This document shows, piece after piece, positions 9,749-64,000 of a DNA stretch of 64,000 nucleotides (its first letter is position 1; each line of letters starts with the position of its first letter). The position numbers and the translations under genes are program-made. Below the pieces are notes generated by a model. It was not told the DNA's origin. It saw nothing but the letters and a program-made list of their open reading frames with translations, and searched no databases. Source of the stretch: Guillardia theta CCMP2712. Taxonomy: Eukaryota; Protista; Cryptophyta. Location of the stretch: contig NW_005434636.1 in NCBI RefSeq assembly GCF_000315625.1, positions 393,298 to 457,297 of the forward strand, read 5' to 3'.

Positions 9749-12295
9749 CGTGTATCTGTCAAACAAATCAGCAATCAGCAATTTCAGTCAATAAACGAGG
9801 AGAAGAGCAATCTTTAATGAAATCTTCTTATCCCCCCACGCCCTGGATTGCCCCCTGTATCCTCCCTCGCCGCCTTCCCTTGATCGCCCCTTCCTGCCTT
9901 GTCCTTGCTTGCTGTCCATCTGAGCTAAGCTCTTCCTCTCCCGTCCCACTATGTCTTCTCCCTCTATCTCGACTCGCATTGCCTTCCGCTGATTTTTCAT
10001 TTTTTCACAGAGGGCATTGACTGGCACCAGTGATGACTTGGACGACCCCTACCCCCATTTCTCAAGAGGTCAGAGGGGTCTCGTGGGTAGACTTCGGAAA
10101 AGGTGGTTCAAAATAAAGGTACCCTACCCCTCAAATGAAATTAGGAAAGTACCGGTGATCTACGTACTCCGCTCCTCACCTTATTGCACAAAGAGAACTA
10201 CCACCCCACCTTGTCGGTTCTCTTCATCTCAAAGGGGACAGTAGGGGTAGCTGACGGAGTTTCATCGATCCTCTTTACAAACATGTTGTTTTAAGAGGTT
10301 TCACACACTGCCGTCAAGAGTTGAAATGTCTTTACAAAATTTAGGCAGTTCCATCGAAAAATTTATCGGTTACTCCTTTTAACGATTTCAGTTTTACTTG
10401 GAATCTCCGATATCTTTCTAACAAGTTTTGCGGCTACAATAGTGTAGGGTTTATTGGGGTTTAGGGTTACACAAGTTTACAATAGTCAAGTTGCGGTTCA
10501 ACGGTTTTAGTACCTGGGCCTGTTACGGTTTGCTCCACTTGCAGTTCAAGCCCAGCGGTGGAGCAAACGGGTAACTGCAAGCCGGGCGGCAGCGCTGGAT
10601 GGTGCAAGACGTCTCAGGTGATAATCGACTTGTAACTTCCGCACTGCGGCACTGCGGCACCCGGTCCAGGATCACATGATGGGCCGTCACGTGTTTCCGA
10701 AAGTTGAAGGCTCAAGTACCGGGAAGTTTGTCTGTGACTCGGGCCCGTGCCAGTAGTACCGTAGTACGGTCCGGCGGGCCGGGCCGCGGACTGATGGAAC
10801 GTATGCCAGCCGTGCCAGTCAGACACATTCGGATGACTCCTCTCTTCAATCAGGCTCTCTCTCTAGCCGCAAGTTGTTTAGGCCTCTCATCTCAGCCTCA
10901 ATTTGTTTGATTGATCTTCGAATAGGAAAGACAAGCCTCCCCCAGCCAGATTGGTCGGTCGAATATCTGACTCGAACTGTGGGAACACACTTGGAGCTTA
11001 TTCGATTCATATTTTCTTGATCTTTGAGTAGGATCAAATGGAACTACCAGGAGATCTGGCGGAAGTTTCATGTCATAGAGCTAGGCGGTACAACGGCAGT
11101 GCACAACATCTTCAAATGCCTTGATGGTCGGGTGACAAGTTCTTTACGGTTCAAAAATTTATCTTTTGGTCTTCAAATGCCGGCGGGCACGCTCTCTCTC
11201 TCTCTCGCTCTCTGTTATCTGAAGTTCTCTCCTCAGACTCTCTTATCTTATCTCCCGGCTTATCTCTGCACCGTGCACATCTAATAGCCCTGCCATGAAA
11301 ATCTTCTACAGAATGGACAATCTTTGAATGGTTATGACTTTCTGACGTCCGATGTAACGTACTATCTCAGAAACTCGGGAGGAGGATGGAACGTATGCGG
11401 CAGCCGTGCCAGTCCGATCAGATAGCGCCGACTCGGTTAACAAACTTGAACTCAGGCTCCTGTAAACTTGCGGCGGCATGTAGCGTGTGGGACGAAGAGG
11501 GGGCTTTCCTAGCCGTCTTGTTAAGGTCCTCTCATGTCTGGATGCTTGGGTTTCACATCCTAGCATTATGTGACAGTCTACTAGCGATGATCTCTTGATG
11601 TGCTCCTCAATTCTGGTTTTGTGTGCATTAAACTCGGTCTTGAGCAAAAACTGTCTTGCTTCAATGCTCTGGAGTCCTGATTCACGGTCCTCGTAGTGAT
11701 CTTTAACTTAACTTAGGCTTTCAGAAACTCCGGCGCTGGCGGCCCGCCGCCCCGGCGCCGCCCGGGCCCCGGCGCGCACCGGCGTGTAACGAGAATAACG
11801 GATAAAGTTTGACAGTCTCCTACTGTAGTTTACTTAATTTCTTCAAATAAGTAAAAATATCACTGCCGGAAATAGCCCTTAGGACGAGGACTGCACCATG
11901 TGAGTACAGGAGCATGAGGAGGGGGGAAGGGCCGCAGGAAGAGGAAGAGAGACGAAGTTTCACCGAACATGAAGAGAGATATGCTGGAGACGGGATAGGA
12001 TATGTGTCGTGCAGATGGGGAAAGGAGCACCAAAGTGTTGCATGTGAAAGGATTATCTAGCCCTGTGAGTTTAATTGAACGGGGGGGGGAGAGCAGGGAG
12101 GTGAGAGCAAGATTGAAATGGGCTAGATAGTAGGAGGTCACGTCAGCTAATTTTGAGTTGTCGTGCGATAGAGAGATGAGGTCTAGAGTAAAATCGAGCG
12201 ACAAGAAGGTTGTCGATGATAATTTCTCCATTTGTAGGTCTCTGAAGATCCGGCCGTTGTTTGAAATCCTTCAAGAGGGAGTTGCTAAAAACGCC

Positions 12296-13520
12296 ATGAA
12301 CGCGAGGACTACCGCGCTCCAGGTGATCCTTCAGACTGAATGCCGACTCGACTCAAAATGCGTTGCAGGCCGCAGAGGCTGCTCCTGCTGCGTCCTCTGG
12401 CAGTGTGTCGTTCCCCAACGACTATCCTAACTCGGTAGTTCTTCTCATTGCAGTGTTGTGACTTCTTGACGATGAGGATGAAGGTCAAGCACTTCTTGTT
12501 GATTGGATCCCTCGGCATGTTCTTGGGGGCATGTGTCTTCCTCTACCTCTCCCTCACCCGCGCCAAGTCCTCCTTGGCTCACACGGTAACCTTTCACATT
12601 GTTATCGATCCTTCCCGTTGCCTGACAAGGAAACTAGCTCATCTTCCTGGCTGCTGCCATCGCCTCCATGGCCTACTATGCCATGTGGACTGGCATCGGA
12701 GTAGAGTGAGTCTTGACCCAGGTTTCTTGTGCTTGGTTTTGACATGCTTCGGTCTCGACAGGTTGAAGACAACTGACCTCTCCCCTCGTGTCATCTTCCT
12801 TTCAAGATACGTGGATGCTCTGCTGACTCAGCCGGTGACTTGGTAGCTGACGACTGCGTTCTGGGATTGAAGTTGGTTTCCAGTTGATCCTCACGACCCT
12901 CTGCCTCATCAACAAGGCTGACAACTCCATCCTCGTCTCTCTTGTTGGCAACGACATCCTCATGGTCCTCGCCGGTACAGTTCCAGAGTCTTGTTCCTGA
13001 TGGCTCACCTCTGAGATCTCAGCCTTCATCGGTTCCCTCAACGTGGCTCCTTTGAAGTACATGTGGTGGTTCGCCAGCTTCATCTTCCTCGTCCTCGTTG
13101 TTGTGCAACTCGTTCAGAAGTTGGAGGGTGCAAATGATGTGTACAAGGTGATTTTGTCTCTCTTGTAACCACTTGGTTTCACATCTTATCTCCACAGATC
13201 CTTACCTACATCACCATTGCCAGCTCCTGCATTTATTCCATCGTCTGGCTCCTCGGCTCCGAAGGAACAGCGGCTCTTGGGTTGACTCAGGAGGTGTCAT
13301 TCCGCCGTCTTGTATTCTGTCGGGTTGAAATGCGAGCAGGTTGGACTCATCACCCTGACTGACCTGGTGTCCAAGCTTGGCTTTGGTCTCTACTTCCTCT
13401 TCAACTACGGTGAACTCAAAAGTCGTTGCAGAGTTTTGATTGTTCTGACGCTCAACAGACGCTGCCATGGGTGAGGACGACACAGATGCCCAGAACCAGC
13501 AGTCTCAGCAATACGTCTGA
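12296..13520 (+). CDS. Microbial (type I) rhodopsin, 10 exons, ~259 aa
   Basis: Manual splicing with introns 12323-12368, 12435-12483, 12586-12637, 12706-12761, 12835-12883, 12975-13022, 13148-13197, 13294-13339, 13410-13458 (all GT..AG, 46-56 nt) gives an open 7-TM protein. Motifs: helix B AIASMAYYAMWTG, helix C RYVDALLTQPLIL, helix D LVGNDILM, helix F YSIVWLLGSEG, helix G DLVSKLGFG (Lys codon 13373-13375). An additional upstream exon is possible. Confidence 0.93.
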
Positions 13521-32231: not shown

Positions 32232-35200
32232 ATGGTGGCAAGCTACAGCCTGGGATTTGCACTAAGTATCGAACAACCCATAGATAATCCCCATAGTTCA
32301 GTGACAGTGTTTGAAGGTCTTATACTTCTACCTCATACATCGCCATCAAGTTTCGAATCGCTTCCTAAACACGATTTGTGCTGGTCTGCACAATACCAAC
32401 GACCCGCCAGTCTTCGGGGAGGGATGGTAAGCACGGAACTGCCTGGAATCCTTTGACATGCCCATGACTGCCAGGCCAAAGCGAGAGTGAAGAAAGCTTC
32501 GGAGAAGGACTTGAAATCAAAGAGTGTAAGCGAAATCAGGAATCTCCAAAGCCAGTCGTTAATTTCATGTTGACACAGGGCAAAGAAGAAGCTGTAGAAT
32601 TGGTTCACGAGGAAATTGAATCACAGCAAAACTCAACGGAAAATGTTTCTGTTGTGAGATGGGAAGTGCAAAAGGTGATTGAACTCAAAGATCGTCTTTC
32701 GTAGCCTGAGCAAGATCTCTGCAGGCAGGAGATCTCGAAGTTTTATCCACGAGAGAATCAGTTCTCAGAAGACCTGACATGTGGATTGGGGATGTCACGA
32801 CTGTCATGAAAAACGTTACTTTGCTTTATCAAAGTATCTCTTTGAATTTTCAGTAGGCTTGGGAAGTGGTCTTTGAAGACGAGGTTGTCGATGACGAAAA
32901 TGGTCTTTCACTTGTGTTCCTAAATGAATAATGATTCATCCTTGATGCAGAGAATATGACTTTTCCACCAAATTCCCTGGAAAGTCCGCTGAAGACACCG
33001 GTTAAATCTTTGAATCTCAACCATTCGTTGTCCTACCAGATGCTACACAACCAAGAAGATCTAATATCCCCAATATCTCCAAAGTTCAGCAATCATTCTC
33101 ACCAGAGCCCTACACCAAACAGGAGTCCAAGGAAGATTCCAGTTGATCCCGGAAAGATTGGTGGGAGGACACTGATCGCAAGGCAAAGAGAGATGAAATA
33201 CAATGCTGGTGTATTGAAAACATTCGATGAAATTATTGTCAATGCCGTCGATCGACAAGTTTGCGATTGAATAAGTGATTTCAATACCTTACAAGCACTG
33301 AACAGGTCGAAGTGGAAGAAATGCGTGAAATCAGAGTCAGTATCGATGCCGCAACGGGTAGGGAAACATGATTTATATTTCACCTGTATTAGAATTCAAT
33401 TCAACTCCTTCACAATCACAGGAAAAATAACCGTGTGGAACGATGGTCCGGGTATCGAACCTGTGATGCACAAGAGCGGTAAAGGATTGATCCCTGAGGT
33501 ACAACACAACCGGATGACTTTGATTGCACTGATGATTGGATGTCATGGTCTCGTGGTGTAGGTTGCTTTTGGAGAATTCATGGCATCAACTAATTTTGAT
33601 GACAACACCAGACAAAGATTTACGGGGTAATTTCGACCCTCCCCAAACTCTCACTTTTGAAATACTGAGATTGCTCCTTTCTTGCTTTTTTTCGAAAAGC
33701 GGTCGATTTGGAGTTGGAGCCAAAGCTACTAATGCATGGTCAAAAGAATTTACTGTGAAAACCTTTCATGCCAAATCAGGGGTTGAATATGAACAGGTAG
33801 TCAAAAAAATATATGTGTGAAATGTTAAACTCTGACTTTATTGGATTCAAGACGTGGACCGACAATATGTTGCACAAGACAAAGCCGAAGGTCGCGATGA
33901 TCAATCTATACGTTGATCTGAATGTTATCGAAATCCAGCTGGTGAACCATGAGCCAGCCAAGAAGGGGTGGACATGCATATCATGGATACCAGGTGATTG
34001 TCGGATATGAATCAAGCAGCACCTCATTGAATTGCATTGCAAGATTATGAGCGATTTGGGATGATGGAAGGGCTAGACAATGACACACGCGCATGCATGA
34101 CTATGCGAGTATACGACCTATGTGCATGCACTCGTGAAAATATTCGGGTAAAACCAATTCCAACTTCCTCAGGATACCAGAAAAATGAAACTTTTGCTCA
34201 CCAGATCACACTAAATGAAGAGGTTCTCCCCTTCAGAACGCTGCAGCATTATACTGTATAATGTTTCATCGACCTTATATTGCGAATTGACAATTTCGGG
34301 CAAGAATTTGTTCTGGCGGAATCCTGATAGTGGGGGTCGTGAAAGGGCTTACATCAATTTGCATGACCCCAAAAGTCCGGCTAGGATCGAAGCAATGATT
34401 TCAAGTTTACTTCTAAATCGTCACATGCAAGTCTTCTGATTGAGCGTTGTGCAGTATCTTCATCTGCAACTCTAGAAGCTAGAGGTATTGTTAATGGAGT
34501 TTTGTGTAGCCAGGTTTTCCATCAATGTGTAATTTTTGTCCATTATCTAATCTCTTTCGAAGGGTACTCATATTGAACACTTGGTCACAAAGATTTCGGA
34601 TGGGCTTGTGCAGGTATTTTCGTCATGAGAAAACCGAATCGTTTGAGATTCTTCAACAGCGGGCAATAAAGCAGCAAAAGCGTGACAAATTGAAGCTGGA
34701 TGACAGTAAAACAGGTCAATCCTTTCTGAACGACTCTCTTGGTTACTTGATGCATCAGGCTTGGCTAAGATGAAGAACTATTTTCGACAACACATGGCAA
34801 TAATTGGTTTGGTGCAGTTCTTTAGGTTTTAGCAATACTCAAATTTGTTCAAGTTGTCGCCTTATTGCCAAATCCAAGATTTGATGGACAGGTTTTCACA
34901 AACCTTGATTCTTGGATGTAATGGTTTTGATCAGACCAAAGAAAAATTGACCCTCAATCCAAAAGAATGGGGTTTCCCTGCAACCATCGATGAAAAGTAC
35001 TTTGAATTTGCTTATTGCTGTCCTGTCTTGTACTTCCTACTCGTTTGAATGCGACTCTCCGTTAGGCTAGTGGAAAGGATAGATCGACACCTTGGTCTTG
35101 TGGACAAGGTAAGATGATACACTGTCTTAAACTGCCAAGTTTGAAGCTGGAGGGTGAATCGAATGTTAGGTTTTGATGGAAGCAGAAGCCAGGAATCTTG

Positions 35201-52239: not shown

Positions 52240-54870
52240 GGGCAAGAATGAGACCGGTAGGGGAAGTTGGTTCCTGTGTGAAGCAGCGGCTCCTGCTGCC
52301 TTCCTCGACCTCAACGATATGAACTCTCCTCTTGAGCTCATCGTTTGCTTAGATTCTGTCCTCTTTCAATCATTGTCATTGGTCTCAAGATCGCTGAGAA
52401 CAAAGTTTGAAATTGCTGTACTGCAGGTGCAAGGAGCGCACCGCATGCCCGAGACTATTGTGCAAGCCTGGACGAGGAGCTCGTAGCGCACGATGAGAGC
52501 ATGAGGGAGGCAGGGACTAGCAAAGTTTGCTGTTGATCAAACACCAGAGCATCGGTGTGTGAGAATCAGGGAGGGTAGAGTACCATTCAGCAATCTAGGG
52601 ATCTTGAGGGTGAGGAGTCTCCATTATTTCACGAGTGAGAGGATCGATCTGGAGTGCAGCTTCAAGTGCAAGATTCACCAAGAGAATCCGGCGGAAGATT
52701 GGAAGGACAGATGTCGGTTAAGGAGGAGGATGGTGGAGGTGACCCTGGGGGGCGAAAATCGTTGGGGGACGATGCGAAGACGGAGGAAATCACGGGTGAT
52801 GCCTCTGAGCAAGCTGTTCCAGCCAAGACGAATGATGCAAGTGAGGCGATGAACAAAGATGCGGTGACAGAAGGAGCAAACGGAGGGCAAGAAAGGGAGG
52901 ATGGTGTTGAAGCAAGGGGTGGGGAAATCGACAACAGTGGATCGGATTCGAAAGCAGTGGGGCTTGTAAACCATGGGGGAGGAGATGAAGATGAGTTGCA
53001 GAAGCAAGCTCAGGAATCTGAACAAGAGAAAGAGGACGGAGCTGATCAGAGCAGACAGGCAGGTGACGTTCAAGGTGAAGGTGCCCATGCAGAGCCTGAA
53101 CAGCGTCAAGCTAAACATGGAGCAAGCAAGCAAGAGGAAGAGATGAAAGGTGGAGCCAGGCAAACAGGTCAAGAAGAGAAAGCTGCAAAAGCCTTTGAGC
53201 AAGAGGGAAGCGGATCCAAGCAATCGCTGGATCGAAACCTTGAGGACCATTCTGCAGTAGAAAACCACTCGAAAGCCGAAGACATCAATAGTAGTGGCAA
53301 CCAGGAGAAACAAGCAAAGGAAGCAATACTGGAGCAGACAGCCAAAGATGGGCAACCAGAGCAACAATTTGAGTCTAGAATTGCTATTCAAGCAGGAGGG
53401 GAGACAGAAATGAATGGAGAGGTGGGAGGGAAACAGAAAGAAGTGAATGGAGAAGTCGGGAAACCAACCGAGGCAGCCGGACTGGATGGCAGGAGAGGAG
53501 AGAAGGGCGAGGACGAAAGTGGAATGCAACCAGGGGGAGGGGAAGAGGAGCAGGATAATGGAGACAAAGGCAACGTCGGGGTTACGAAGCAGGAAAAGGA
53601 AGCTGAAGGAGAGGGGAGCAGCCAGCATGGGGACTGTGTGGCAAGGACGCAGGCTGCTGCAGCTGCTGGGACAGAAAAGCAGCTGGAGACAGCTGGGGCT
53701 GGGGCAGNNNNNNNNNNNNNNNNNNNNNNNNNNNNNNNNNNNNNNNNNNNNNNNNNNNNNNNNNNNNNNNNNNNNNNNNNNNNNNNNNNNNNNNNNNNNN
53801 NNNNNNNNNNNNNNNNNNNNNNNNNNNNNNNNNNNNNNNNNNNNNNNNNNNNNNNNNNNNNNNNNNNNNNNNNNNNNNNNNNNNNNNNNNNNNNNNNNNN
53901 NNNNNNNNNNNNNNNNNNNNNNNNNNNNNNNNNNNNNNNNNNNNNNNNNNNNNNNNNNNNNNNNNNNNNNNNNNNNNNNNNNNNNNNNNNNNNNNNNNNN
54001 NNNNNNNNNNNNNNNNNNNNNNNNNNNNNNNNNNNNNNNNNNNNNNNNNNNNNNNNNNNNNNNNNNNNNNNNNNNNNNNNNNNNNNNNNNNNNNNNNNNN
54101 NNNNNNNNNNNNNNNNNNNNNNNNNNNNNNNNNNNNNNNNNNNNNNNNNNNNNNNNNNNNNNNNNNNNNNNNNNNNNNNNNNNNNNNNNNNNNNNNNNNN
54201 NNNNNNNNNNNNNNNNNNNNNNNNNNNNNNNNNNNNNNNNNNNNNNNNNNNNNNNNNNNNNNNNNNNNNNNNNNNNNNNNNNNNNNNNNNNNNNNNNNNN
54301 NNNNNNNNNNNNNNNNNNNNNNNNNNNNNNNNNNNNNNNNNNNNNNNNNNNNNNNNNNNNNNNNNNNNNNNNNNNNNNNNNNNNNNNNNNNNNNNNNNNN
54401 NNNNNNNNNNNNNNNNNNNNNNNNNNNNNNNNNNNGCACACCGCGGCCTTGAACGCTGTACTTGATACTCCGGAGCAGACAGCAGCCGTTACTGGGGTTG
54501 AGGGTTCGAAGTCTGGGGAACTGGTAGAGAAGCAGGAGGGGGAGGCAGCCGCTGCTGGGGCAGCCGGAACAGAAGCGCTGTCTGCCGCTGCTGCTGCTGC
54601 TTCTGCGACTGGGCCGGAGAAGCAGGAGGAGGTAAAAGCCACAGAGGAAGCAGGCAAGGCGGAGCAGACAGCAGCCGGTACTGGGTCAGGAAATGCAGGG
54701 TCGAAGTCCGAGGGAGGGGCAGATAAGCAGGAGGGGGAGGCGGCCGCTACTGGTACGGGAAGGAAGGAGGTGGGAGATGTGGCAAGAAGTCAGCATTCTC
54801 TGCCTGTAGGAGAGACAGTCATGCATGGAGGGGGGGAGGCGGCCGCTACTGGGGCAGCCGGAACAGAAGC

Positions 54871-54901
<31 letters not shown>

Positions 54902-57080
54902 GAAGTAGGGAAGCAGGAGGAGGTAAAAGCCCCAGAGGAAGCAGGCAAGGCGGAGCAGACAGCAGCCGTTACTGGGGTTGAGGGTTCGAAGTCTGGGGAA
55001 CTGGTAGAGAAGCAGGAGGGGGAGGCAGCCGCTGCTGGGGCAGCCGGAACGGAAGCGCTGTCTGCCGCTGCTGCTGCTGCTGCTTCTGCGACTGGGCCGG
55101 AGAAGCAGGAGGAGGTAAAAGCCCCAGAGGAAGCAGGCAAGGCGGAGCAGACAGCAGCCGGTACTGGGTCAGGGAACCATGAAGAGGCAGTTGGGGCAGG
55201 GAATGCAGGGTCGAAGTCCGAGGGAGGGGCAGATAAGCAGGAGGGGGAGGCGGCCGCTACTGGTACGGGAAGGAAGGAGGAGGACAAAGTCTCAGGAAGC
55301 GTGTTGAAAACGAACAAGGATTCTGGTTCAGGAACACAGTCAGCTCCTTCTCCTTCGTCTTCTACTTCTACTTCTACTTCTACTTCTACTGCTCCTGCTG
55401 CTCCTGCTGCTGCTCCTGCTGTTGCTGCTGCTGCTGCTGCGACTGAGGCAGAGAAGAAGGAGGTGCAGGCAGCAGGGAATGGGGAAAGCAAGCAGGAAGA
55501 AGCCTTGCCAGTACAACAGGATGAGATTGTGGGAAAGGCAGAGAAGCCTGACGGTGTGGCTGGAGTCGAGCAAGAAAAGCAGGAGGAGGCAGCTGTTGTG
55601 GGTGAGCAGGTCGGGGGAGAGAAAGATGGAGCAGCCACGGGGATGAAAGCGGCGGGAGAAGGGAAGGAGGAAGAGGCAGCTGCTGCAGGGATTGTGAAGG
55701 AGGACATCTCCTCGGGCGCGGTCGATGAGACAGGAGGAGGGAACGAGCAGGTTGGAGGTGATGTGGTAGCAGGAGGGAAGGGAGGGGAGCTTGTCTCAGG
55801 GGTTGACAAGGGAGGGGTTGAGGAAAGAGCGGAAGATCTGAGCGAGAGCCTCCGACAGGGCTGGATGTCTTCCATAGACTCGCTGGATGAGTTTCATATC
55901 CAGGGATCGTTGCAGATGTTGCTGCTGCAAAAGCTCGGTTCCATCCTCCTCCTCCTGGTTGCCTTCGATCAACATCTGCAGCTGTCTTCCATCAGCGTGC
56001 AAGACCTGTCCCACCTCATCTCGCTGCTGGGGCTGCAGAAGGAGGAGGAGGAGGTGGAGCGGCTGTTCGATGATCTCAAGAGGGAGGAGGAAGGGGCAAC
56101 GGAGGGGGCCGCTGGTCTCCCTCCTCTTGACCTGCGCGACCTCACCGTCCTCCTCTCCAGCCCGATCCTCAAGCTCCAGTTGGCCGCTGCGAAGAGGATC
56201 TACGAGCTGATAGGAGGGCTGGCGCATCACGATCTCAGCATGCAGGAGAAGGCCGGGAAGCAAGCGAGGCTTATCCAGTACATTTCTCGCCTTTGCTTCG
56301 TGAGTCTCCTGCCCCGTCTCTCTCCTCATTTCAAAGTTCCAGCTGCTTCTCCCTTTCTTGCTCTCACTTGTACTGCTCTCTCTCCCCTTCCCTCCCCGCC
56401 TGCTCTGACTGTTTTTCTCTTTTGACATCTTCTCCTGCAGAGCTCGGAGCAGTCAGAAGCATGCTACATCAGCCTCCTCGTCCTCGCTGAGCTGACGCAT
56501 GCCAACCCGGCCAACTCTACGAGGCTTCTTGCAGTGCCGGGGCTGATGAGGAGAATCGTCCGCCTGCTCGACCCCAACCGCAGGGTCGGAGACCTCACCA
56601 TCCCCCGGACAGCTGCGAGAATCCTGTCAAACCTCCTCACGCAGTCGGGAGACAAGAAGACTTCCTCCTCTTCTTCCTCTCTCTCTTCCGACGCCTGGTC
56701 GGTGGTCCAAAGCATCGACCCTTCGGCTGTCCATCGCGCTCTTGTCATCCTGTCTTCTCCCTCGTCCAGGTCGCAGCCGCCCAAGAGCAGCTTGCAGGGG
56801 GGACAGAAGATCGGAAGGGGTGCTGACTCATCCTTCTCGTGGGAGGGAAGCAACTTGCAGCGAGACAGTCTGCCTCTCAAATCAACGGCAGGCTCGAGGG
56901 CGCGATGGCTGAGGCAGGAGAAGGTCTCAGCAAGGGCTGAGTTGGTCCGGTCGCCTAGACGCCAGGCACCTTTCCTCGGCAGCGGTCAGCGCATGCGAGC
57001 TCATACCTCAAGGAGATGATGGATGAAGAGACGGAAGATGGAAGGCGGGAAAGAAGCGGCAAGGAGGCGAAAGGGGGTAA
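52240..57080 (+). CDS. Large protein: acidic G/E/A-rich repeat region + EF-hand-like segment + armadillo-like repeats (boundaries approximate, spans gap)
   Basis: Long E/G/A-rich ORFs on both sides of the gap; ISVQDL..L...EEVERLFDDL; ARM-like LVLAELTHANPANSTRLLAVPGLMRRIVRLL..AARILSNL. Confidence 0.55.
53708..54435. other. Assembly gap (N run) within coding tandem repeat
   Basis: N run flanked by the repeat units. Confidence 0.99.
54472..55281 (+). repeat. Coding near-identical direct repeats (period ~480 nt, nested sub-units)
   Basis: ggagcagacagcagccgttactggggttgagggttcgaagtc... occurs at 54472 and 54952; peptide units EQTAAVTGVEGSKSGELVEKQEGEAAAAG repeat. Confidence 0.9.
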
Positions 57081-57470: not shown

Positions 57471-59844
57471 TTAGAAGCACTTGGCGGCAGAGTCGTGCAC
57501 GTCCACAGCTCTTCCGGACTGCCAGGTACGTTCAGAGAGGTCAAACTGCGTTGCTCCTTCTTCTCACCTGATCCAACATGGAGCCTGCAGCTGCTGCCTG
57601 CTTCCACGCCTCGTCCCACTCCACGGCCTTGGCAGTCGAGCAAGCGACTGAGGGTCCACCTGTGAATAGAGGAAGGAGTCAGGGTTGCAGGATGACGAGC
57701 AGGAGGAGGAGGGAGACAAGGGAGGTCAGGGTGGAACCTGGCACAGTCTTGATGCAAGTCTCGTCAGGATAGAAGCTCTCGAAGATGCTCCTGGCGAAGT
57801 AGGCCTCCTTCGTTCCCGGGGTGTTGTAGGGGAACCTGTGCTCTCTAAACGCGAACATGGTGTCATCCACCACTCGATTGGCATGCGCCTTGAGGCCGTC
57901 GATCCAGTCGTAACCAACCCCGTCCGAGAACTGCTCTTTCTGCCTGAAGAGGACCTCCTTGGGGAGGTAGATCTCTCCCTTGGAATCGGGCTTGTTGAAC
58001 GCCTCCCTCATCACCCACTTTTCGATAAACTGCTCCTTTTCTCCCTTCTTGATCATTTTGAACGACGCGTCCAAGTTCATCACCACGTCCAGAAAGTCCT
58101 TGTCCAAGAACGGGACTCGAGCCTCCAGCCCCCACGCCATGGTCGCCTTGTTCGCCCTCAAGCAGTCGTACAGGTACAAACCCTGGAGCTTGCGCACACA
58201 CTCCTCATGGAATTCCTGTGCGTTGGGAGCCTTGTGGAAGTAAAGATAACCTCCGAGCTCCTCGTCTGCTCCCTCCCCTGACAAGACCATCTTCACACCC
58301 ATGGCCTTGATCTTGCGAGCAAGGATGAACATGGGGGTACCAGCGCGGATGGTGGTGACATCGTAAGTCTCGAGATGGTAGATCACATCCTGCACAGCAT
58401 CGATACCCTCTTGCACGGTGAAGTGAAACTCGTGGTGCTCGGTGCCGAGCATGTCAGCCACCTTGCGGGCATTGAAGAGGTCAGGGGAACCCTTCAACCC
58501 GATCGAGAAGGTGGCAGGCCGAGGCTTTCCTGCCAGGTCGCACATCTTCACAACGCAAGAGGCAACGAGCGAGGAGTCGAGGCCGCCGGAGAGGAGAACG
58601 CCATAGGGAACGTCGGTCATGAGCCTCTTGGAGATCGCTTCGACGAAGGTGGTGCGGATGAGGTCCAAGTTCAACTTCTGTTGGGCAGCCTCGAATCCAA
58701 ACCACTTGGGGTTGTAGTACCGGACAAGCTGCTTCGTCTTGTGCGACCAGTAGTGTCCGGGGGGGAACTGCTCAATCTTCTTGCACTCGGTGACAAGGCA
58801 CTTCATCTCTGAGGCGAACCACACGGACCCATCAGCTCCCCAGCCCATGTACATGGAGTCAACTCCCATGGGGTCCCTGGCAGCGTAGAACTCGCCCTTG
58901 TCTCCGGCAATGGCGAAGGCAAAGTCTCCATCCAACAGGGAGGCAACCTAGTGGGTGTCAGAGTCGCGACGGCACATCCCCTCACCTCAAATCACCTCAT
59001 CGCCTCTCTCCTTGTAAAGATGAACGACAACCTCACAGTCAGACTTCGTTCTGAAGTCAGTCTTGTCCTTCAACAGGGGCTTCAGCTTCTCGTGGTTGTA
59101 GATTTCTCCGTTGATCGCCAGCGCCGCGGACCTATCGTGGGAGAACAGGGGCTGGTTTCCTGACAGCGTGTGCAGACGTTGGTGGTCACCTACCCTTGCC
59201 TCCTTCCTCTCCTGTAGATCCTGTTTTCAGAGCCACCCAAAACCATGCAAGAATCAAAAACTATCACAGAGAGGAAGGGTTCTACTCCGAGACTACTACT
59301 ACTGCTACGTTATCGACTTTACCATCCAGCTTTCCTTCTCTGCCTTGTCGTTCATACCTGTGGATCGTCCATCGCTCCAACAATAGCCAGACGCTCATGG
59401 CCGAGAGCAGATATTCTTGATCCCGGCACATCTTTCTGTGCAAAGATCCGGTTCATACCATCACACTGCAGCATCAAAATACCAACCTCAAGAGGGATCA
59501 TGTGGATTCCAGAGCCGTCAGGTCCTCTGTGGCGGATCGTACGGGAAAGCTGAAGAATCTTCATCCTCAAAGTGTTGTGATCCAAGGTAGAACTAGAGGA
59601 CAAGAAAGCTGTCATGGGCAAACCATCAAACAGCAGGATTCATACCCGTACACCCCCAAGAACCCGCAACCTCCCTTGAGATGCATCGCAGGCGTGCACT
59701 GGATGCCGCTTCGAAGCTGTAAGTCGAGCATTCAGCAAACAGAAAGAAGAGACTTTTGCTCACTACCGGTGACGCCCATCTGTCCGATATGGACACGGAT
59801 GGCGAGGCCAAGCTAACCACCAACAAGGCCACAATAGCCCTCAT
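57471..59844 (-). CDS. asnB: Glutamine-dependent asparagine synthetase B with N-terminal signal peptide/leader
   Basis: CGFLGVYG..LSRTIRHRGPDGSG, LGHERLAIV, NGEIYNH, SDCEV, LLSGGLDSSL, SGEGADE..GGYLYFH, GLEARVPFLD, RQKEQFSDGVG, GGPSVACST; stop at 57471. Confidence 0.95.
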
Positions 59845-60379
59845 CTGTCGCAAGCAACATGTCAAGATGGCAAGCAAGACCAACAAAGAGCAGCAGCTTC
59901 ATTTTGTACATCTGTCATGCCACAGAAGGAAGCTTTGCTAAGGATCAAAACAGAGTGGATTGACAGAGGAACAGCTGAGTTCGGTTCTTCGTATGTTCTC
60001 CTTCGCAGCCCCGATCGTGTGATTGATGGATAACGAGGAGATGTCATGGTATCCTCAAAGGCGCCCAATGCTCTCGAAATTTACGAAAAATACTAATGCG
60101 TGTGGCACACATACAAATTCCTGCTCACAAGGATTGCAACTAACGGTCGTGTTCAAGACAGATACTATTACAAGAAAACCGTTGTTACTTCTTCACGATG
60201 GCAAACAACATTATCTCTTATGACTTGCAGCCCATGACTTCTTCCCTGCTTGCTTTGGGAGTGTAGATGCTCCTGCCCTCAACCTGACCTGTCTTCCTTC
60301 CTGCCTCTCCCTTCCTTCCCTTCATTTTCTTCCTTCGCCATCACGCGGCCGGGCATCAAAAAAAAAGCCTGCAGACCCC

Positions 60380-61150: not shown

Positions 61151-62310
61151 CATTGCTGGAGGGAAAATCTTACAGGGTAAGGAGAACGAGCGCGATCCTG
61201 AACGGACTTTTACCGTCATGGATCAACTGCTCCTATCAGGTGCTTGTAAGTTCGTGCATAAGATGCTCGAAGCTCGGAGGTTTGCTTCCCTAACTTTGGA
61301 CAAGCCTTGACCATAACAAGTTTTTGGAACCTGTCCTGCCTTATGAGCATCCCTGAGCCTTAGCTGATACAGTACATGACTGACCTCCACTGACAAGGAG
61401 AAAGATTCTTTATGTTCCTGGACGTTGGTCGTTCATCCCTCAATCTGATTCAAACTTTCAAGGCGCAATGGTCCATGGCCGACAGCTTCCTCGTCATGGA
61501 TTGTCAGCAGATCCAGTTTCCAGTTCATTTCCGTCAGGTTAAAACCAACCATCACCGACCTAGGAGGCGGAGAGATGTCCTCCGTAGCGCACTTTCATTG
61601 AGTGTGGTGCTTTTGGTATTTGTAAAGGATGAAGTCGGCATTGCTTCGTAAAATGCTCTACTTCCCATGCCATTGCTTCTACCCCTCCTTCCCCACTTCT
61701 TTCTCCTCCGCGAGCAAGAACAAGTACGGAAGTCTTCATTGTCCATTCCATAGCTCACAAGGGAATCCCCCTCCCCCCCGTTCCTCGTCCTCCTCCCCCC
61801 TCATTGACCCCCGCGCTCCCAGCATCGGGGAGTTAATTGACTAAAACTCGTAGCGTACGAGAAGACGCATCGGCGACAGAGCACGAGGGGAGACGAGAGG
61901 GGAGGGAGGGAGAGGAGGGAGGGAAGTGAAGGGAGGAAGGCGGAGAGAGGAGAGATGAGAGAGGGAGGAGGGGAGGGAGAGTAGGAAGGGAGGAGAGGAA
62001 GGAAGAAAAATGGAGTCGAATGGAGGCCAAGGCGGTGAAGGAGGGGAGGAACGAGGGAAACGGTTCTATTTTTGTGACGGAGGAAGCGGAAGTGGTTGGG
62101 ATGTACGGAGAGGAGAAGAGGAGTCTATGAAGCAATGTTGATGAAAAAGAAAGAAGCGGAATTTGTTGGGGATGAGGACGGGGTGGAGACATCGGGATAA
62201 TGACGGGTACATGATCACAGGGTCGCCGACCAAAGGCCACGGTGAAAGTGGTTTACAGGCCAGCCTTATACTTGTTCCTCCTGTCTCATACTTGCATTCT
62301 TGGTTGCAAT

Positions 62311-64000
62311 ATGAAGTCGTCGGCTCAGTTGTCTCGATTGGCCGAAAGCAGTATAGGGATCACGGAGTACATCTCTGAAACGCCGGGAATCAAGGGCTCG
62401 ATGAAGTACCGGTTCTCCGACTTTATCGTGCGAGAGGTCGCCATGGACAAGACGGTCGTGTGCTTGACGGATATGTCGGGCAAGCTGGAAGGAGCGCCGG
62501 CGCAGGAGGTGGCAGAGGAAGGAGTTGATGGGTTCGAAAAGCTGGAATCTTTGGTCGGTAAGGAGGTGGCAGCCCGTGTAAAGACCTTGGTAGAGCAAGA
62601 TGAGGTGGACGGAGCAGCTGAGATTGTCCTGGAGGCAGACGCTGACAAGGCCCATCGGACGGCCGTGCATACTTGTATCAAACAGCACTTTCCTAAGCTG
62701 ACCACAGACACCGTCAAGGTTGGGAGTGACCAGAAAACTGCCGTGCGGATTTTTTCCAAGGTTGACAACTCGAAAGGAAGGCCTAACAAGCGACAGCGGA
62801 GAGAGGCAATCTTTCAGGGCGCCAAGCGTGATGCCAAATTCATCAAATTTGTGCTGTACAAAGAGAACCTGGACACGATGGCTGCTGTGTCGATCATTTC
62901 GAAGATGGTGAAGACGAAAGGCGGTACCTTCTCGTATGCTGGCACCAAGGACAGGCGAGCTTGCACCACACAGCTTGTGTCTGCGCATCGAGTTGACCCT
63001 TTCGTGCTGACGGACCTCAACAAGAGACTCCGAAACATCTGCATTGGAAATCTTTCTGTCTGTGAACAAACTCTTAAGCTTGGTCAGCTGTACGGGAATC
63101 GATTCCAGATCATTCTCCGCGATGTTCAAGCCAGTGAAGGCTCAATAGAAGCGCTCTGCAATTCTCTTAAGGAAAAAGGCTTCATCAACTACTTTGGGAA
63201 GCAAAGGTTTGGGACAAGTTCTATCCCCACATACTCGATTGGAAGGGAGATCTTGCATGAGGACTGGGAAAAAGCTGCTGACTTGATCCTGTGCCCACGA
63301 GACGGGGAGAAAGAAGAGTCAAAGACAGCAAGAGAGAAGTTCAAGGAACATAAGGATCCCGCAAAGGCCCTCGAAGAATTCCCCAGGTGGATGTTTGCTG
63401 AGAGGACGTTGTTGGACGTGTACAAGAAGCGAGGGATGAACTCTCATCTCAACGCTCTCCAGGCTCTGCCAAGAAACCTGCGATTGATGTACATTCACTC
63501 TTACCAGAGCTACATCTGGAACAAGATGGTCAGCGAGAGGCTCCGGATGTACGGCAAGGACAGGCCAGTGGAAGGCGATCTCGTGCTGGAGAGCAAAGAC
63601 GTGGAAAGCGAGAGCTTGTTCGACTTGGAGGGGGTGGACGAGTCGACTCTGAGCGGTGCGAATGCCTCGGAGGAGCAGGAGAGCGATCATGACAAATGGA
63701 CCAAGAGTCATCCCAAGAAGGTGCGACGACGGCTCGACTTAGCGACGACAGACTAATGTCTGCCCAGGTCAAGGTACTTGCAGCGAGCGATGTGGACAAA
63801 TACTCCATCTTCGACGTCGTGCTGCCCCTCCCCGGGGTATCGATCTCGTACCCTACGAACGAGATAGGCAAGAAGGTCGACAAACGGCTCTCGGCCGCCC
63901 CCTCTGCCTCTGACGCCTCCCCTTGCAGTACGAAGAAGCCCTCAAGGCCGATGGCCTGGACATCAACAATCTCGCCAACAAGAACAAGGAGTTCACACTC
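62311..64000 (+). CDS. PUS7: tRNA/multisubstrate pseudouridine synthase TruD/PUS7 (truncated by window end)
   Basis: G.MKYRFSDFIVRE, FVLYKENLDT, YAGTKDRRACTTQ (catalytic Asp), LGQLYGNRFQI.LR, GFINYFG.QRFG, MYIHSYQSYIWN. Confidence 0.95.

What the first reader, a model, noticed from the sequence alone, without database searches (positions are those of the whole stretch)
59640..59844. Asparagine synthetase whose catalytic N-terminal Cys is masked by a leader ending in a ubiquitin-tail-like LKGG
Seen: removing one ~50-nt intron gives MRAIVALLVVSLASPSVS-ISDRWASPLRSGIQCTPAMHLKGG|CGFLGVYGSTLDHNTLRMKILQLSRTIRHRGPD. The Cys codon (59668-59666) directly follows LKGG, with no Met before it. Known: AsnB is an Ntn amidotransferase that needs Cys as residue 1 with a free amine, and L-R-G-G is the ubiquitin C-terminus cut by deubiquitinases. 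Inference: the protein enters via the ER, possibly to the periplastid compartment, and must be cut exactly after GG to use glutamine. It is therefore a natural reporter for a GG-specific, DUB-like maturation protease, perhaps tied to the ERAD-derived SELMA import system. RGG-type leaders may have been noticed before in complex-plastid algae, so novelty needs a literature check.
Basis: partly seen in the sequence, partly recalled or inferred. Interest (0 to 1): 0.85.

Follow-up and report, generated by a model that had tools for sequence, protein, structure and literature searches.

The report
Ubiquitin-tail leader masking algal asparagine synthetase
A cryptophyte alga makes an asparagine synthetase whose catalytic first residue sits behind an import leader ending in a copy of ubiquitin's tail; this ending is kept across seven genera, which is good indirect evidence that such leaders are cut exactly there, possibly by a ubiquitin-tail protease encoded in the endosymbiont's relict nucleus.

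Summary
Observation confirmed. The genome fits Guillardia theta. Transcript contigs from three studies show the 50-nt intron as proposed, and in one the known spliced leader is joined directly before ATG 59844, so no Met precedes Cys43. All 11 cryptophyte orthologue rows (7 genera, one clade) end the leader [ML]-x-L-[RK]-G-G|C, matching ubiquitin residues 71-76, while the linker is 14% identical and the glutaminase site is intact. Related haptophyte-side leaders, the alga's plastid-type GOGAT, PurF and a cytosolic AsnB paralogue lack the motif. The motif is genome-wide (also on EF-1alpha, replacing Met1); the scan already noted it in at least 10 findings on other DNA of this genome. New here: the Cys1 constraint on the cut site, and a candidate protease. 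ZUFSP-family enzymes cut bare RLRGG whereas typical deubiquitinases do not, and a ZUFSP homologue is reported in all four cryptophyte nucleomorph genomes. Not shown: localisation, cleavage, the protease. I could not fetch the nucleomorph protein, and this HLKGG departs from ZUFSP's R-x-R rule. No paper describing the motif was found, but three key papers were unreadable.

The parts
59845..59846 (-). Spliced-leader acceptor AG directly before the start codon (0-nt UTR after the 17-nt leader)
   Evidence: one contig only
59767..59844 (-). Exon 1: start codon, signal peptide (hydrophobic core 59838-59809), start of linker
   Evidence: signal peptide judged by a hydropathy rule, SignalP not available
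59717..59766 (-). Intron 1, 50 nt, GT..AG
   Evidence: spliced in contigs of 3 studies
59646..59716 (-). Exon 2: end of linker, motif and first mature residues
59669..59686 (-). M-H-L-K-G-G, equivalent to ubiquitin residues 71-76; proposed cut after the last Gly
   Evidence: cleavage inferred
59666..59668 (-). Catalytic Cys (precursor residue 43, mature residue 1)
   Evidence: aligns with Cys after Met1 in 65 homologues
59487..59592 (-). Exon 3 with HRGPD (Arg at mature position 30)
59358..59435 (-). Exon 4 with HERL
58996..59220 (-). Exon 5 (starts 59211 or 59220, alternative acceptors) with NGEIYN and SDCE
57738..58947 (-). Exon 6: end of glutaminase domain and synthetase domain (SGGLDS, GEGADE)
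   Evidence: Pfam PF13537 and PF00733
57568..57659 (-). Exon 7
57471..57518 (-). Exon 8, coding part to stop codon

Best explanation
The gene encodes a second, imported asparagine synthetase B. Shown: the spliced mRNA reads signal-like peptide, short basic linker, [ML]-x-L-[RK]-G-G, then catalytic Cys. Inferred: the signal takes the precursor into the ER; the non-aromatic linker takes it across the periplastid membrane and no further; in the periplastid compartment (relict red-algal cytoplasm) a protease that reads the ubiquitin-tail sequence cuts after Gly-Gly and frees Cys1, switching on glutamine use and supplying asparagine to the compartment's own translation. The same cut would mature many unrelated periplastid proteins, the motif standing where Met1 would be. 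Most likely protease (about 0.4 on its own): the nucleomorph-encoded ZUFSP/ZUP1 homologue, since that family cuts the bare RLRGG peptide; other peptide-tolerant deubiquitinase-like enzymes make up the rest.
For: mRNA structure and 5' end. Motif in 11/11 cryptophyte rows; last four residues 87% identical, linker 14-21%; genera named. Glutaminase motifs intact in all 11. No Phe/Trp at any plausible +1 site in 12 leaders and Tyr possible in only 2; non-aromatic +1 means periplastid retention (PMC4494062). A Met-Cys cytosolic paralogue exists and a periplastid AsnRS is predicted. Motif shared by unrelated proteins: 14 of 26 exact LRLRGG hits follow a signal-like stretch against 1.4% of random places; EF-1alpha resumes at Gly2 right after it; a cytosolic-type LeuRS carries it. 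Controls: plastid-type GOGAT has signal + Phe and ends EERDA|C; PurF ends NEK|C. Cys1 is the nucleophile and must be N-terminal for glutamine use. ZUFSP cuts RLRGG-AMC, typical DUBs do not (PMC8776766; PMC5824887); ZUFSP homologue predicted in four nucleomorph genomes (PMC6559170; the name used is the PDB name of ZUFSP); no nuclear ZUFSP found.
Against: No localisation, mature N-terminus or cleavage data. Human ZUFSP needs both arginines of R-x-R-G-G, while this leader is H-L-K-G-G and 7 of 11 rows have Lys at -3; position -5 is R in 7, N in 2, H and K once. The nucleomorph assignment is a fold-recognition result from a paper; I could not fetch the protein or check its catalytic residues. Haptophyte-side leaders expose Cys after L, A or G. 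Signal peptides were judged by a crude rule.
Confidence: 0.62

Rival explanations
1. Self-processing: as other N-terminal-nucleophile enzymes do, the precursor cuts its own propeptide with Cys as nucleophile; Gly at -1 favours this and no outside protease is needed.
For: PurF and GOGAT of this genome keep family propeptides before Cys; B. subtilis PurF loses a short N-terminal peptide; autoprocessing of Ntn enzymes and Gly(-1) in proteasome beta subunits are from my own knowledge. Haptophyte-side leaders end in L, A or G.
Against: The same motif sits at the Met1 position of proteins with no such chemistry, e.g. EF-1alpha; the conserved pattern is the ubiquitin tail, not the acidic amidotransferase propeptide; homologues without import start Met-Cys.
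Confidence: 0.1
2. The motif is a sorting or binding signal (for example read by ubiquitin-binding SELMA parts); the leader is removed by a sequence-tolerant peptidase plus trimming, and Cys1 ends up free without a GG-specific cut.
For: The motif tracks with signal-bearing, non-aromatic leaders; plastid-type leaders of relatives are removed without GG.
Against: A sorting tag need not abut the mature start, yet GG is always exactly at -2/-1 while leader length varies from 32 to 50 aa; cryptophyte leaders are reported to reach the periplastid space on the +1 rule alone.
Confidence: 0.12
3. The protein stays in the ER lumen or goes on to the stroma, and is cut after GG there by another protease.
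For: Localisation is only predicted; Leu at +1 is possible in some orthologues and can permit stromal import.
Against: Motif partners are cytosolic-type translation factors, which fit only the periplastid compartment; the plastid-type GOGAT lacks the motif; no C39 double-glycine peptidase found in the nuclear genome.
Confidence: 0.1
4. Only the signal peptide is removed; Cys stays masked and the enzyme works with free ammonia only.
For: Class II amidotransferases keep ammonia-dependent activity without Cys1 (for PurF).
Against: Cys and all checked glutaminase motifs are kept in 11 of 11 rows; enzymes that give up glutamine use tend to lose the Cys (PurF').
Confidence: 0.05

Closest known systems
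Class II glutamine amidotransferase asparagine synthetase B (E. coli AsnB 1CT9; human ASNS)
   Same: Two-domain layout and all checked catalytic motifs; orthologue P0003 matches 1CT9 at E 1.3e-168.
   Different: Cys is residue 43 behind a leader instead of residue 2 behind Met; about 20-aa cryptophyte-specific insertion in the glutaminase domain.
Bipartite targeting sequence of periplastid proteins in cryptophytes and diatoms
   Same: Signal-like core, non-aromatic +1, net basic linker.
   Different: Ends in a fixed six-residue motif; I found no conserved end motif or processing peptidase described for such leaders.
Ubiquitin fusion precursors and the N-end-rule ubiquitin fusion technique (own knowledge)
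   Same: L-R-L-R-G-G-like end followed directly by the desired first residue.
   Different: No ubiquitin fold upstream; typical DUBs would not cut it.
ZUFSP/ZUP1/Mug105 deubiquitinases
   Same: Cut after the bare ubiquitin-tail peptide; homologue reported in all four cryptophyte nucleomorphs.
   Different: Known members need R-x-R; no role as an import-leader peptidase is described; nucleomorph protein untested.
Propeptide-bearing PurF and GOGAT
   Same: Cys1 freed by removal of an upstream peptide.
   Different: Their propeptides end in acidic family motifs, not GG.
SELMA with ptDUP (diatoms, haptophytes)
   Same: Ubiquitin-type chemistry in the periplastid compartment.
   Different: ptDUP is proposed to remove ubiquitin, not the leader, and is absent from cryptophytes.

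Membership tests
Asparagine synthetase B (class II amidotransferase) | Glutaminase domain plus Asn_synthase domain | tested here: met
   Pfam PF13537 and PF00733 on exon 6; PF13522 on orthologue; PDB match
Asparagine synthetase B (class II amidotransferase) | Catalytic Cys and motifs HRGPD, HERL, GxQP, NGEIYN, SDCE, SGGLDS | tested here: met
Asparagine synthetase B (class II amidotransferase) | Cys is residue 1 of the mature protein | not testable with these tools
   needs N-terminal sequencing
Periplastid-type bipartite targeting sequence | N-terminal signal peptide | tested here: inconclusive
   hydrophobic core 2.5-3.1 (KD mean of 10) and small-residue cleavage sites in 12 of 12 leaders by a crude rule; SignalP not available
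Periplastid-type bipartite targeting sequence | Non-aromatic residue at +1 after signal cleavage | tested here: met
   no aromatic +1 at any candidate site in the window protein; Tyr possible in 2 of 12 orthologues
Periplastid-type bipartite targeting sequence | Directs a reporter to the periplastid compartment | not testable with these tools
   needs GFP fusion or immunolabel
Ubiquitin fusion precursor | Folded ubiquitin domain before the GG | tested here: not met
   only 32-50 aa upstream, including the signal; no ubiquitin domain on P0003
Ubiquitin fusion precursor | L-R-L-R-G-G-like end | tested here: met
   [ML]-x-L-[RK]-G-G in 11 of 11
Canonical ZUFSP substrate | R-x-R-G-G with both arginines | tested here: not met
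   window protein H-L-K-G-G; only P0006 of the 11 has both Arg; rule. Lowers 'is a canonical substrate', not 'works like one'
ZUFSP family (nucleomorph ORF Gt2_270 and orthologues) | ZUFSP-type catalytic Cys/His/Asp and acidic arginine-binding residues | not tested
   sequence could not be retrieved; assignment rests on PMC6559170
Self-processing amidotransferase propeptide (PurF/GOGAT type) | Acidic family motif directly before Cys | tested here: not met
   GG instead of the EK, DA or DN ends seen in PurF and GOGAT of this genome
Bacterial double-glycine leader / C39 system | C39 peptidase in the genome | tested here: inconclusive
   no PF03412 match in the nuclear genome; intron-rich genes can be missed and organelle genomes were not searched

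The most novel reading that the evidence does not exclude
Cryptophytes have a general periplastid processing peptidase, a nucleomorph-encoded ZUFSP-type deubiquitinase core turned to maturing host-encoded imports; host genes gained a ubiquitin-tail mimic at the end of their leaders to be cut by it, and asparagine synthetase is a built-in enzymatic reporter of the exact cut. This would be one reason to keep the nucleomorph.
Probability: 0.38. Interest if true: 0.88.

Novelty: new variant of a known kind. Interest (0 to 1): 0.74.

Why it matters
How leaders of proteins that stop in the periplastid compartment are removed, and by what, is not described in the papers I could read. A fixed ubiquitin-tail end gives a predictor for the periplastid proteome and a defined cut site. 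Asparagine synthetase makes the cut testable by an enzyme assay, because glutamine use needs Cys as residue 1. The ZUFSP link names a single small gene to express and test with commercial-type peptide substrates, and would give a function to an orphan gene kept in all four sequenced cryptophyte nucleomorphs.

Tried and rejected
Alternative donor 59763 for intron 1: in frame but not seen in transcripts. Upstream coding exon: rejected, the extra 5' letters are the spliced leader. Other Ntn enzymes with GG|C: a genome pattern search gave 28 hits; of the 20 read, only this gene was a real case; PurF, two GOGATs, and two other amidotransferase-like genes have family-type or Met-Cys starts. The reversed-pattern control is uninformative; I used an in-frame signal test instead. 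Single-sequence structure prediction was useless (pLDDT 35). The only nuclear C78 peptidase found is UFSP-type. Retrieval of the nucleomorph ZUFSP failed by five routes. Signal-bearing USPs: none within about 1.2 kb upstream of the catalytic box in 20 loci, inconclusive for intron-rich genes; UCH, OTU, Josephin and others not checked. Literature: five motif searches gave zero papers; Gould 2006 MBE, Curtis 2012 Nature and Stork 2012 were not held, so a prior mention there or in theses cannot be excluded. Raw RNA reads (X22) covered only the 3' end.

Full report
Source. The window lies on contig 38 of an 87.1 Mb, 669-contig genome with ~50-nt introns; its closest homologues are cryptophyte proteins and it holds 23 copies of the published Guillardia theta spliced leader.

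Observation. Contigs of three runs from three studies skip 59717-59766 exactly and support six more introns, giving an 8-exon, 632/635-aa protein with Cys at 43. One contig begins with 13 letters that are not in the window but match the 17-nt spliced leader of PMC5619915, joined at the AG immediately before the ATG. This 5'-end evidence is one contig. I did join the exons from coordinates inside scripts, to check the frame and for local alignment and the tree.

Conservation. Searches with exon 6 and with the N-terminal region of a Teleaulax orthologue gave ten database clusters that, with the window protein, form the GG group; named sources are Rhodomonas, Teleaulax, Hemiselmis, Chroomonas, Proteomonas and Baffinella. 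All 11 end the leader [ML]-x-L-[RK]-G-G|C, the pattern of ubiquitin residues 71-76 (own knowledge). Mean pairwise identity is 87% over the last four residues, 21% over -14..-7, 14% over -30..-15 and 72% over the first mature residues. The seven full-length rows form one clade (SH-aLRT 100, quick tree). All keep the glutaminase motifs, so the Cys is under selection as a catalytic residue. Of other homologues, 65 start Met-Cys and 27 have extensions ending in M (22), L (3), A (1) or G (1); none of 22 haptophyte-side leaders has L[RK]GG. These show that imported asparagine synthetases can expose Cys without GG, so the GG route is particular to cryptophytes.

Compartment. A crude rule finds a hydrophobic core and small-residue cleavage sites in all 12 leaders tested, with no aromatic +1 in the window protein and a net basic linker. 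Published rule: non-aromatic +1 means retention in the periplastid compartment. G. theta has a distant Met-Cys paralogue for the cytosol and a predicted periplastid asparaginyl-tRNA synthetase, so free asparagine is needed there. Localisation is inferred, not shown.

The motif is general. An LRLRGG-type pattern has 353 genomic hits (includes Ser/Phe variants). Among the first 30, 14 of 26 exact hits follow an in-frame Met plus hydrophobic stretch, against 1.4% of 13,562 random places; leaders split by introns, like this one, are missed. One is EF-1alpha, where the residue after GG aligns with Gly2; one is a cytosolic-type leucyl-tRNA synthetase; one is probably Trm112 with Met kept after GG (weak Pfam match). 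Within the same enzyme class the controls differ: the GOGAT with signal plus Phe (plastid type) ends EERDA|C, the other GOGAT ERDN|C and PurF NEK|C. The scan's earlier notes on other DNA of this genome had already reported the genome-wide motif; my reading before looking was the same. None mentions asparagine synthetase or ZUFSP.

What this gene adds. For most motif carriers a cut at GG is only suggested by position. Here chemistry constrains it: Cys1 is the nucleophile of ASNS and must be N-terminal for glutamine use in this enzyme class, though ammonia can still serve (stated for PurF; the role of the free amine is from my own knowledge). With the site conserved in seven genera, a mature start at Cys is very likely (about 0.9). 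That the cut is made by a GG-reading protease in trans follows from the shared motif on unrelated proteins (inference).

Which protease. Typical deubiquitinases need a folded ubiquitin; ZUFSP/ZUP1/Mug105 cores cut the bare RLRGG peptide fast. A fold-recognition study reports a homologue of the 'zinc finger protein with Ufm1-specific peptidase domain' in all four cryptophyte nucleomorph genomes, with no role assigned; that is the PDB name of ZUFSP. No nuclear ZUFSP was found with a single query or a profile (weak as absence evidence), the nuclear C78 gene is UFSP-type, and cryptophytes lack ptDUP. A nucleomorph product is made inside the compartment where these leaders arrive. Against: human ZUFSP needs both arginines, while most of these leaders have Lys at -3 and this one has His at -5; and I could not retrieve the nucleomorph sequence to check it. 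I put this identity at about 0.4. Nothing here ties the cut to SELMA.

Novelty and score. The enzyme family, bipartite leaders, spliced leader and ZUFSP are all known. A ubiquitin-tail end on periplastid leaders was not found in the searchable literature (no RGG in PMC12136025, PMC12412216, PMC4494062), but three central papers were not held. I class it as a new variant of a known kind. Interest 0.74: real, conserved, and turns an open step of complex-plastid import into a direct assay with a named candidate enzyme; held back because cleavage, localisation and protease are all inferred and prior mention is not excluded.

Noticed in passing
window 59845-59846 (-): This gene is trans-spliced to the known 17-nt cryptophyte spliced leader with a 0-nt UTR; 23 leader copies lie in clusters elsewhere in the genome.
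   Followed up: yes
window 59211 / 59220 (-): Two acceptors for intron 4 differ by 9 nt (3 aa) inside a cryptophyte-specific insertion of about 20 aa in the glutaminase domain; both are seen in different studies.
   Followed up: partly
window 32409-32426 (+): S-L-R-G-G-M, noted by another first-reader entry as a topoisomerase II leader; the motif is there, but I did not check the gene model or the signal.
   Followed up: partly
window 62242-63756 (+): TruD/PUS7-like pseudouridine synthase exon with a short hydrophobic stretch near its possible start and no LRGG.
   Followed up: partly
L032 (G000:C164, about 10734-12440): Intron-free, Met-Cys asparagine synthetase paralogue only about 42% identical to the others in the tree; origin not examined.
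   Followed up: partly
window 59686-59684 (-): Met at -6 in 6 of 11 leaders could serve as an internal start for a signal-less form, but it alternates with Leu, which suggests a plain hydrophobic position.
   Followed up: no
P0273 and atlas cluster rank 2: A 321-aa ZUFSP homologue with a signal-like start (organism unnamed) and a compact 285-aa C78 cluster commonest in diatoms; might be imported ZUFSPs in lineages without a nucleomorph.
   Followed up: no
window about 53700-54440: Assembly gap (N run) inside a long low-complexity, repeat-rich Glu/Ala/Gly ORF at about 52650-56400 (+).
   Followed up: no
Haptophyte-side homologues P0007, P0011, P0015, P0044, P0128, P0162: Plastid-type leaders ending in A, L or G directly before the catalytic Cys: natural reporters for exact stromal processing or trimming in haptophytes.
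   Followed up: partly
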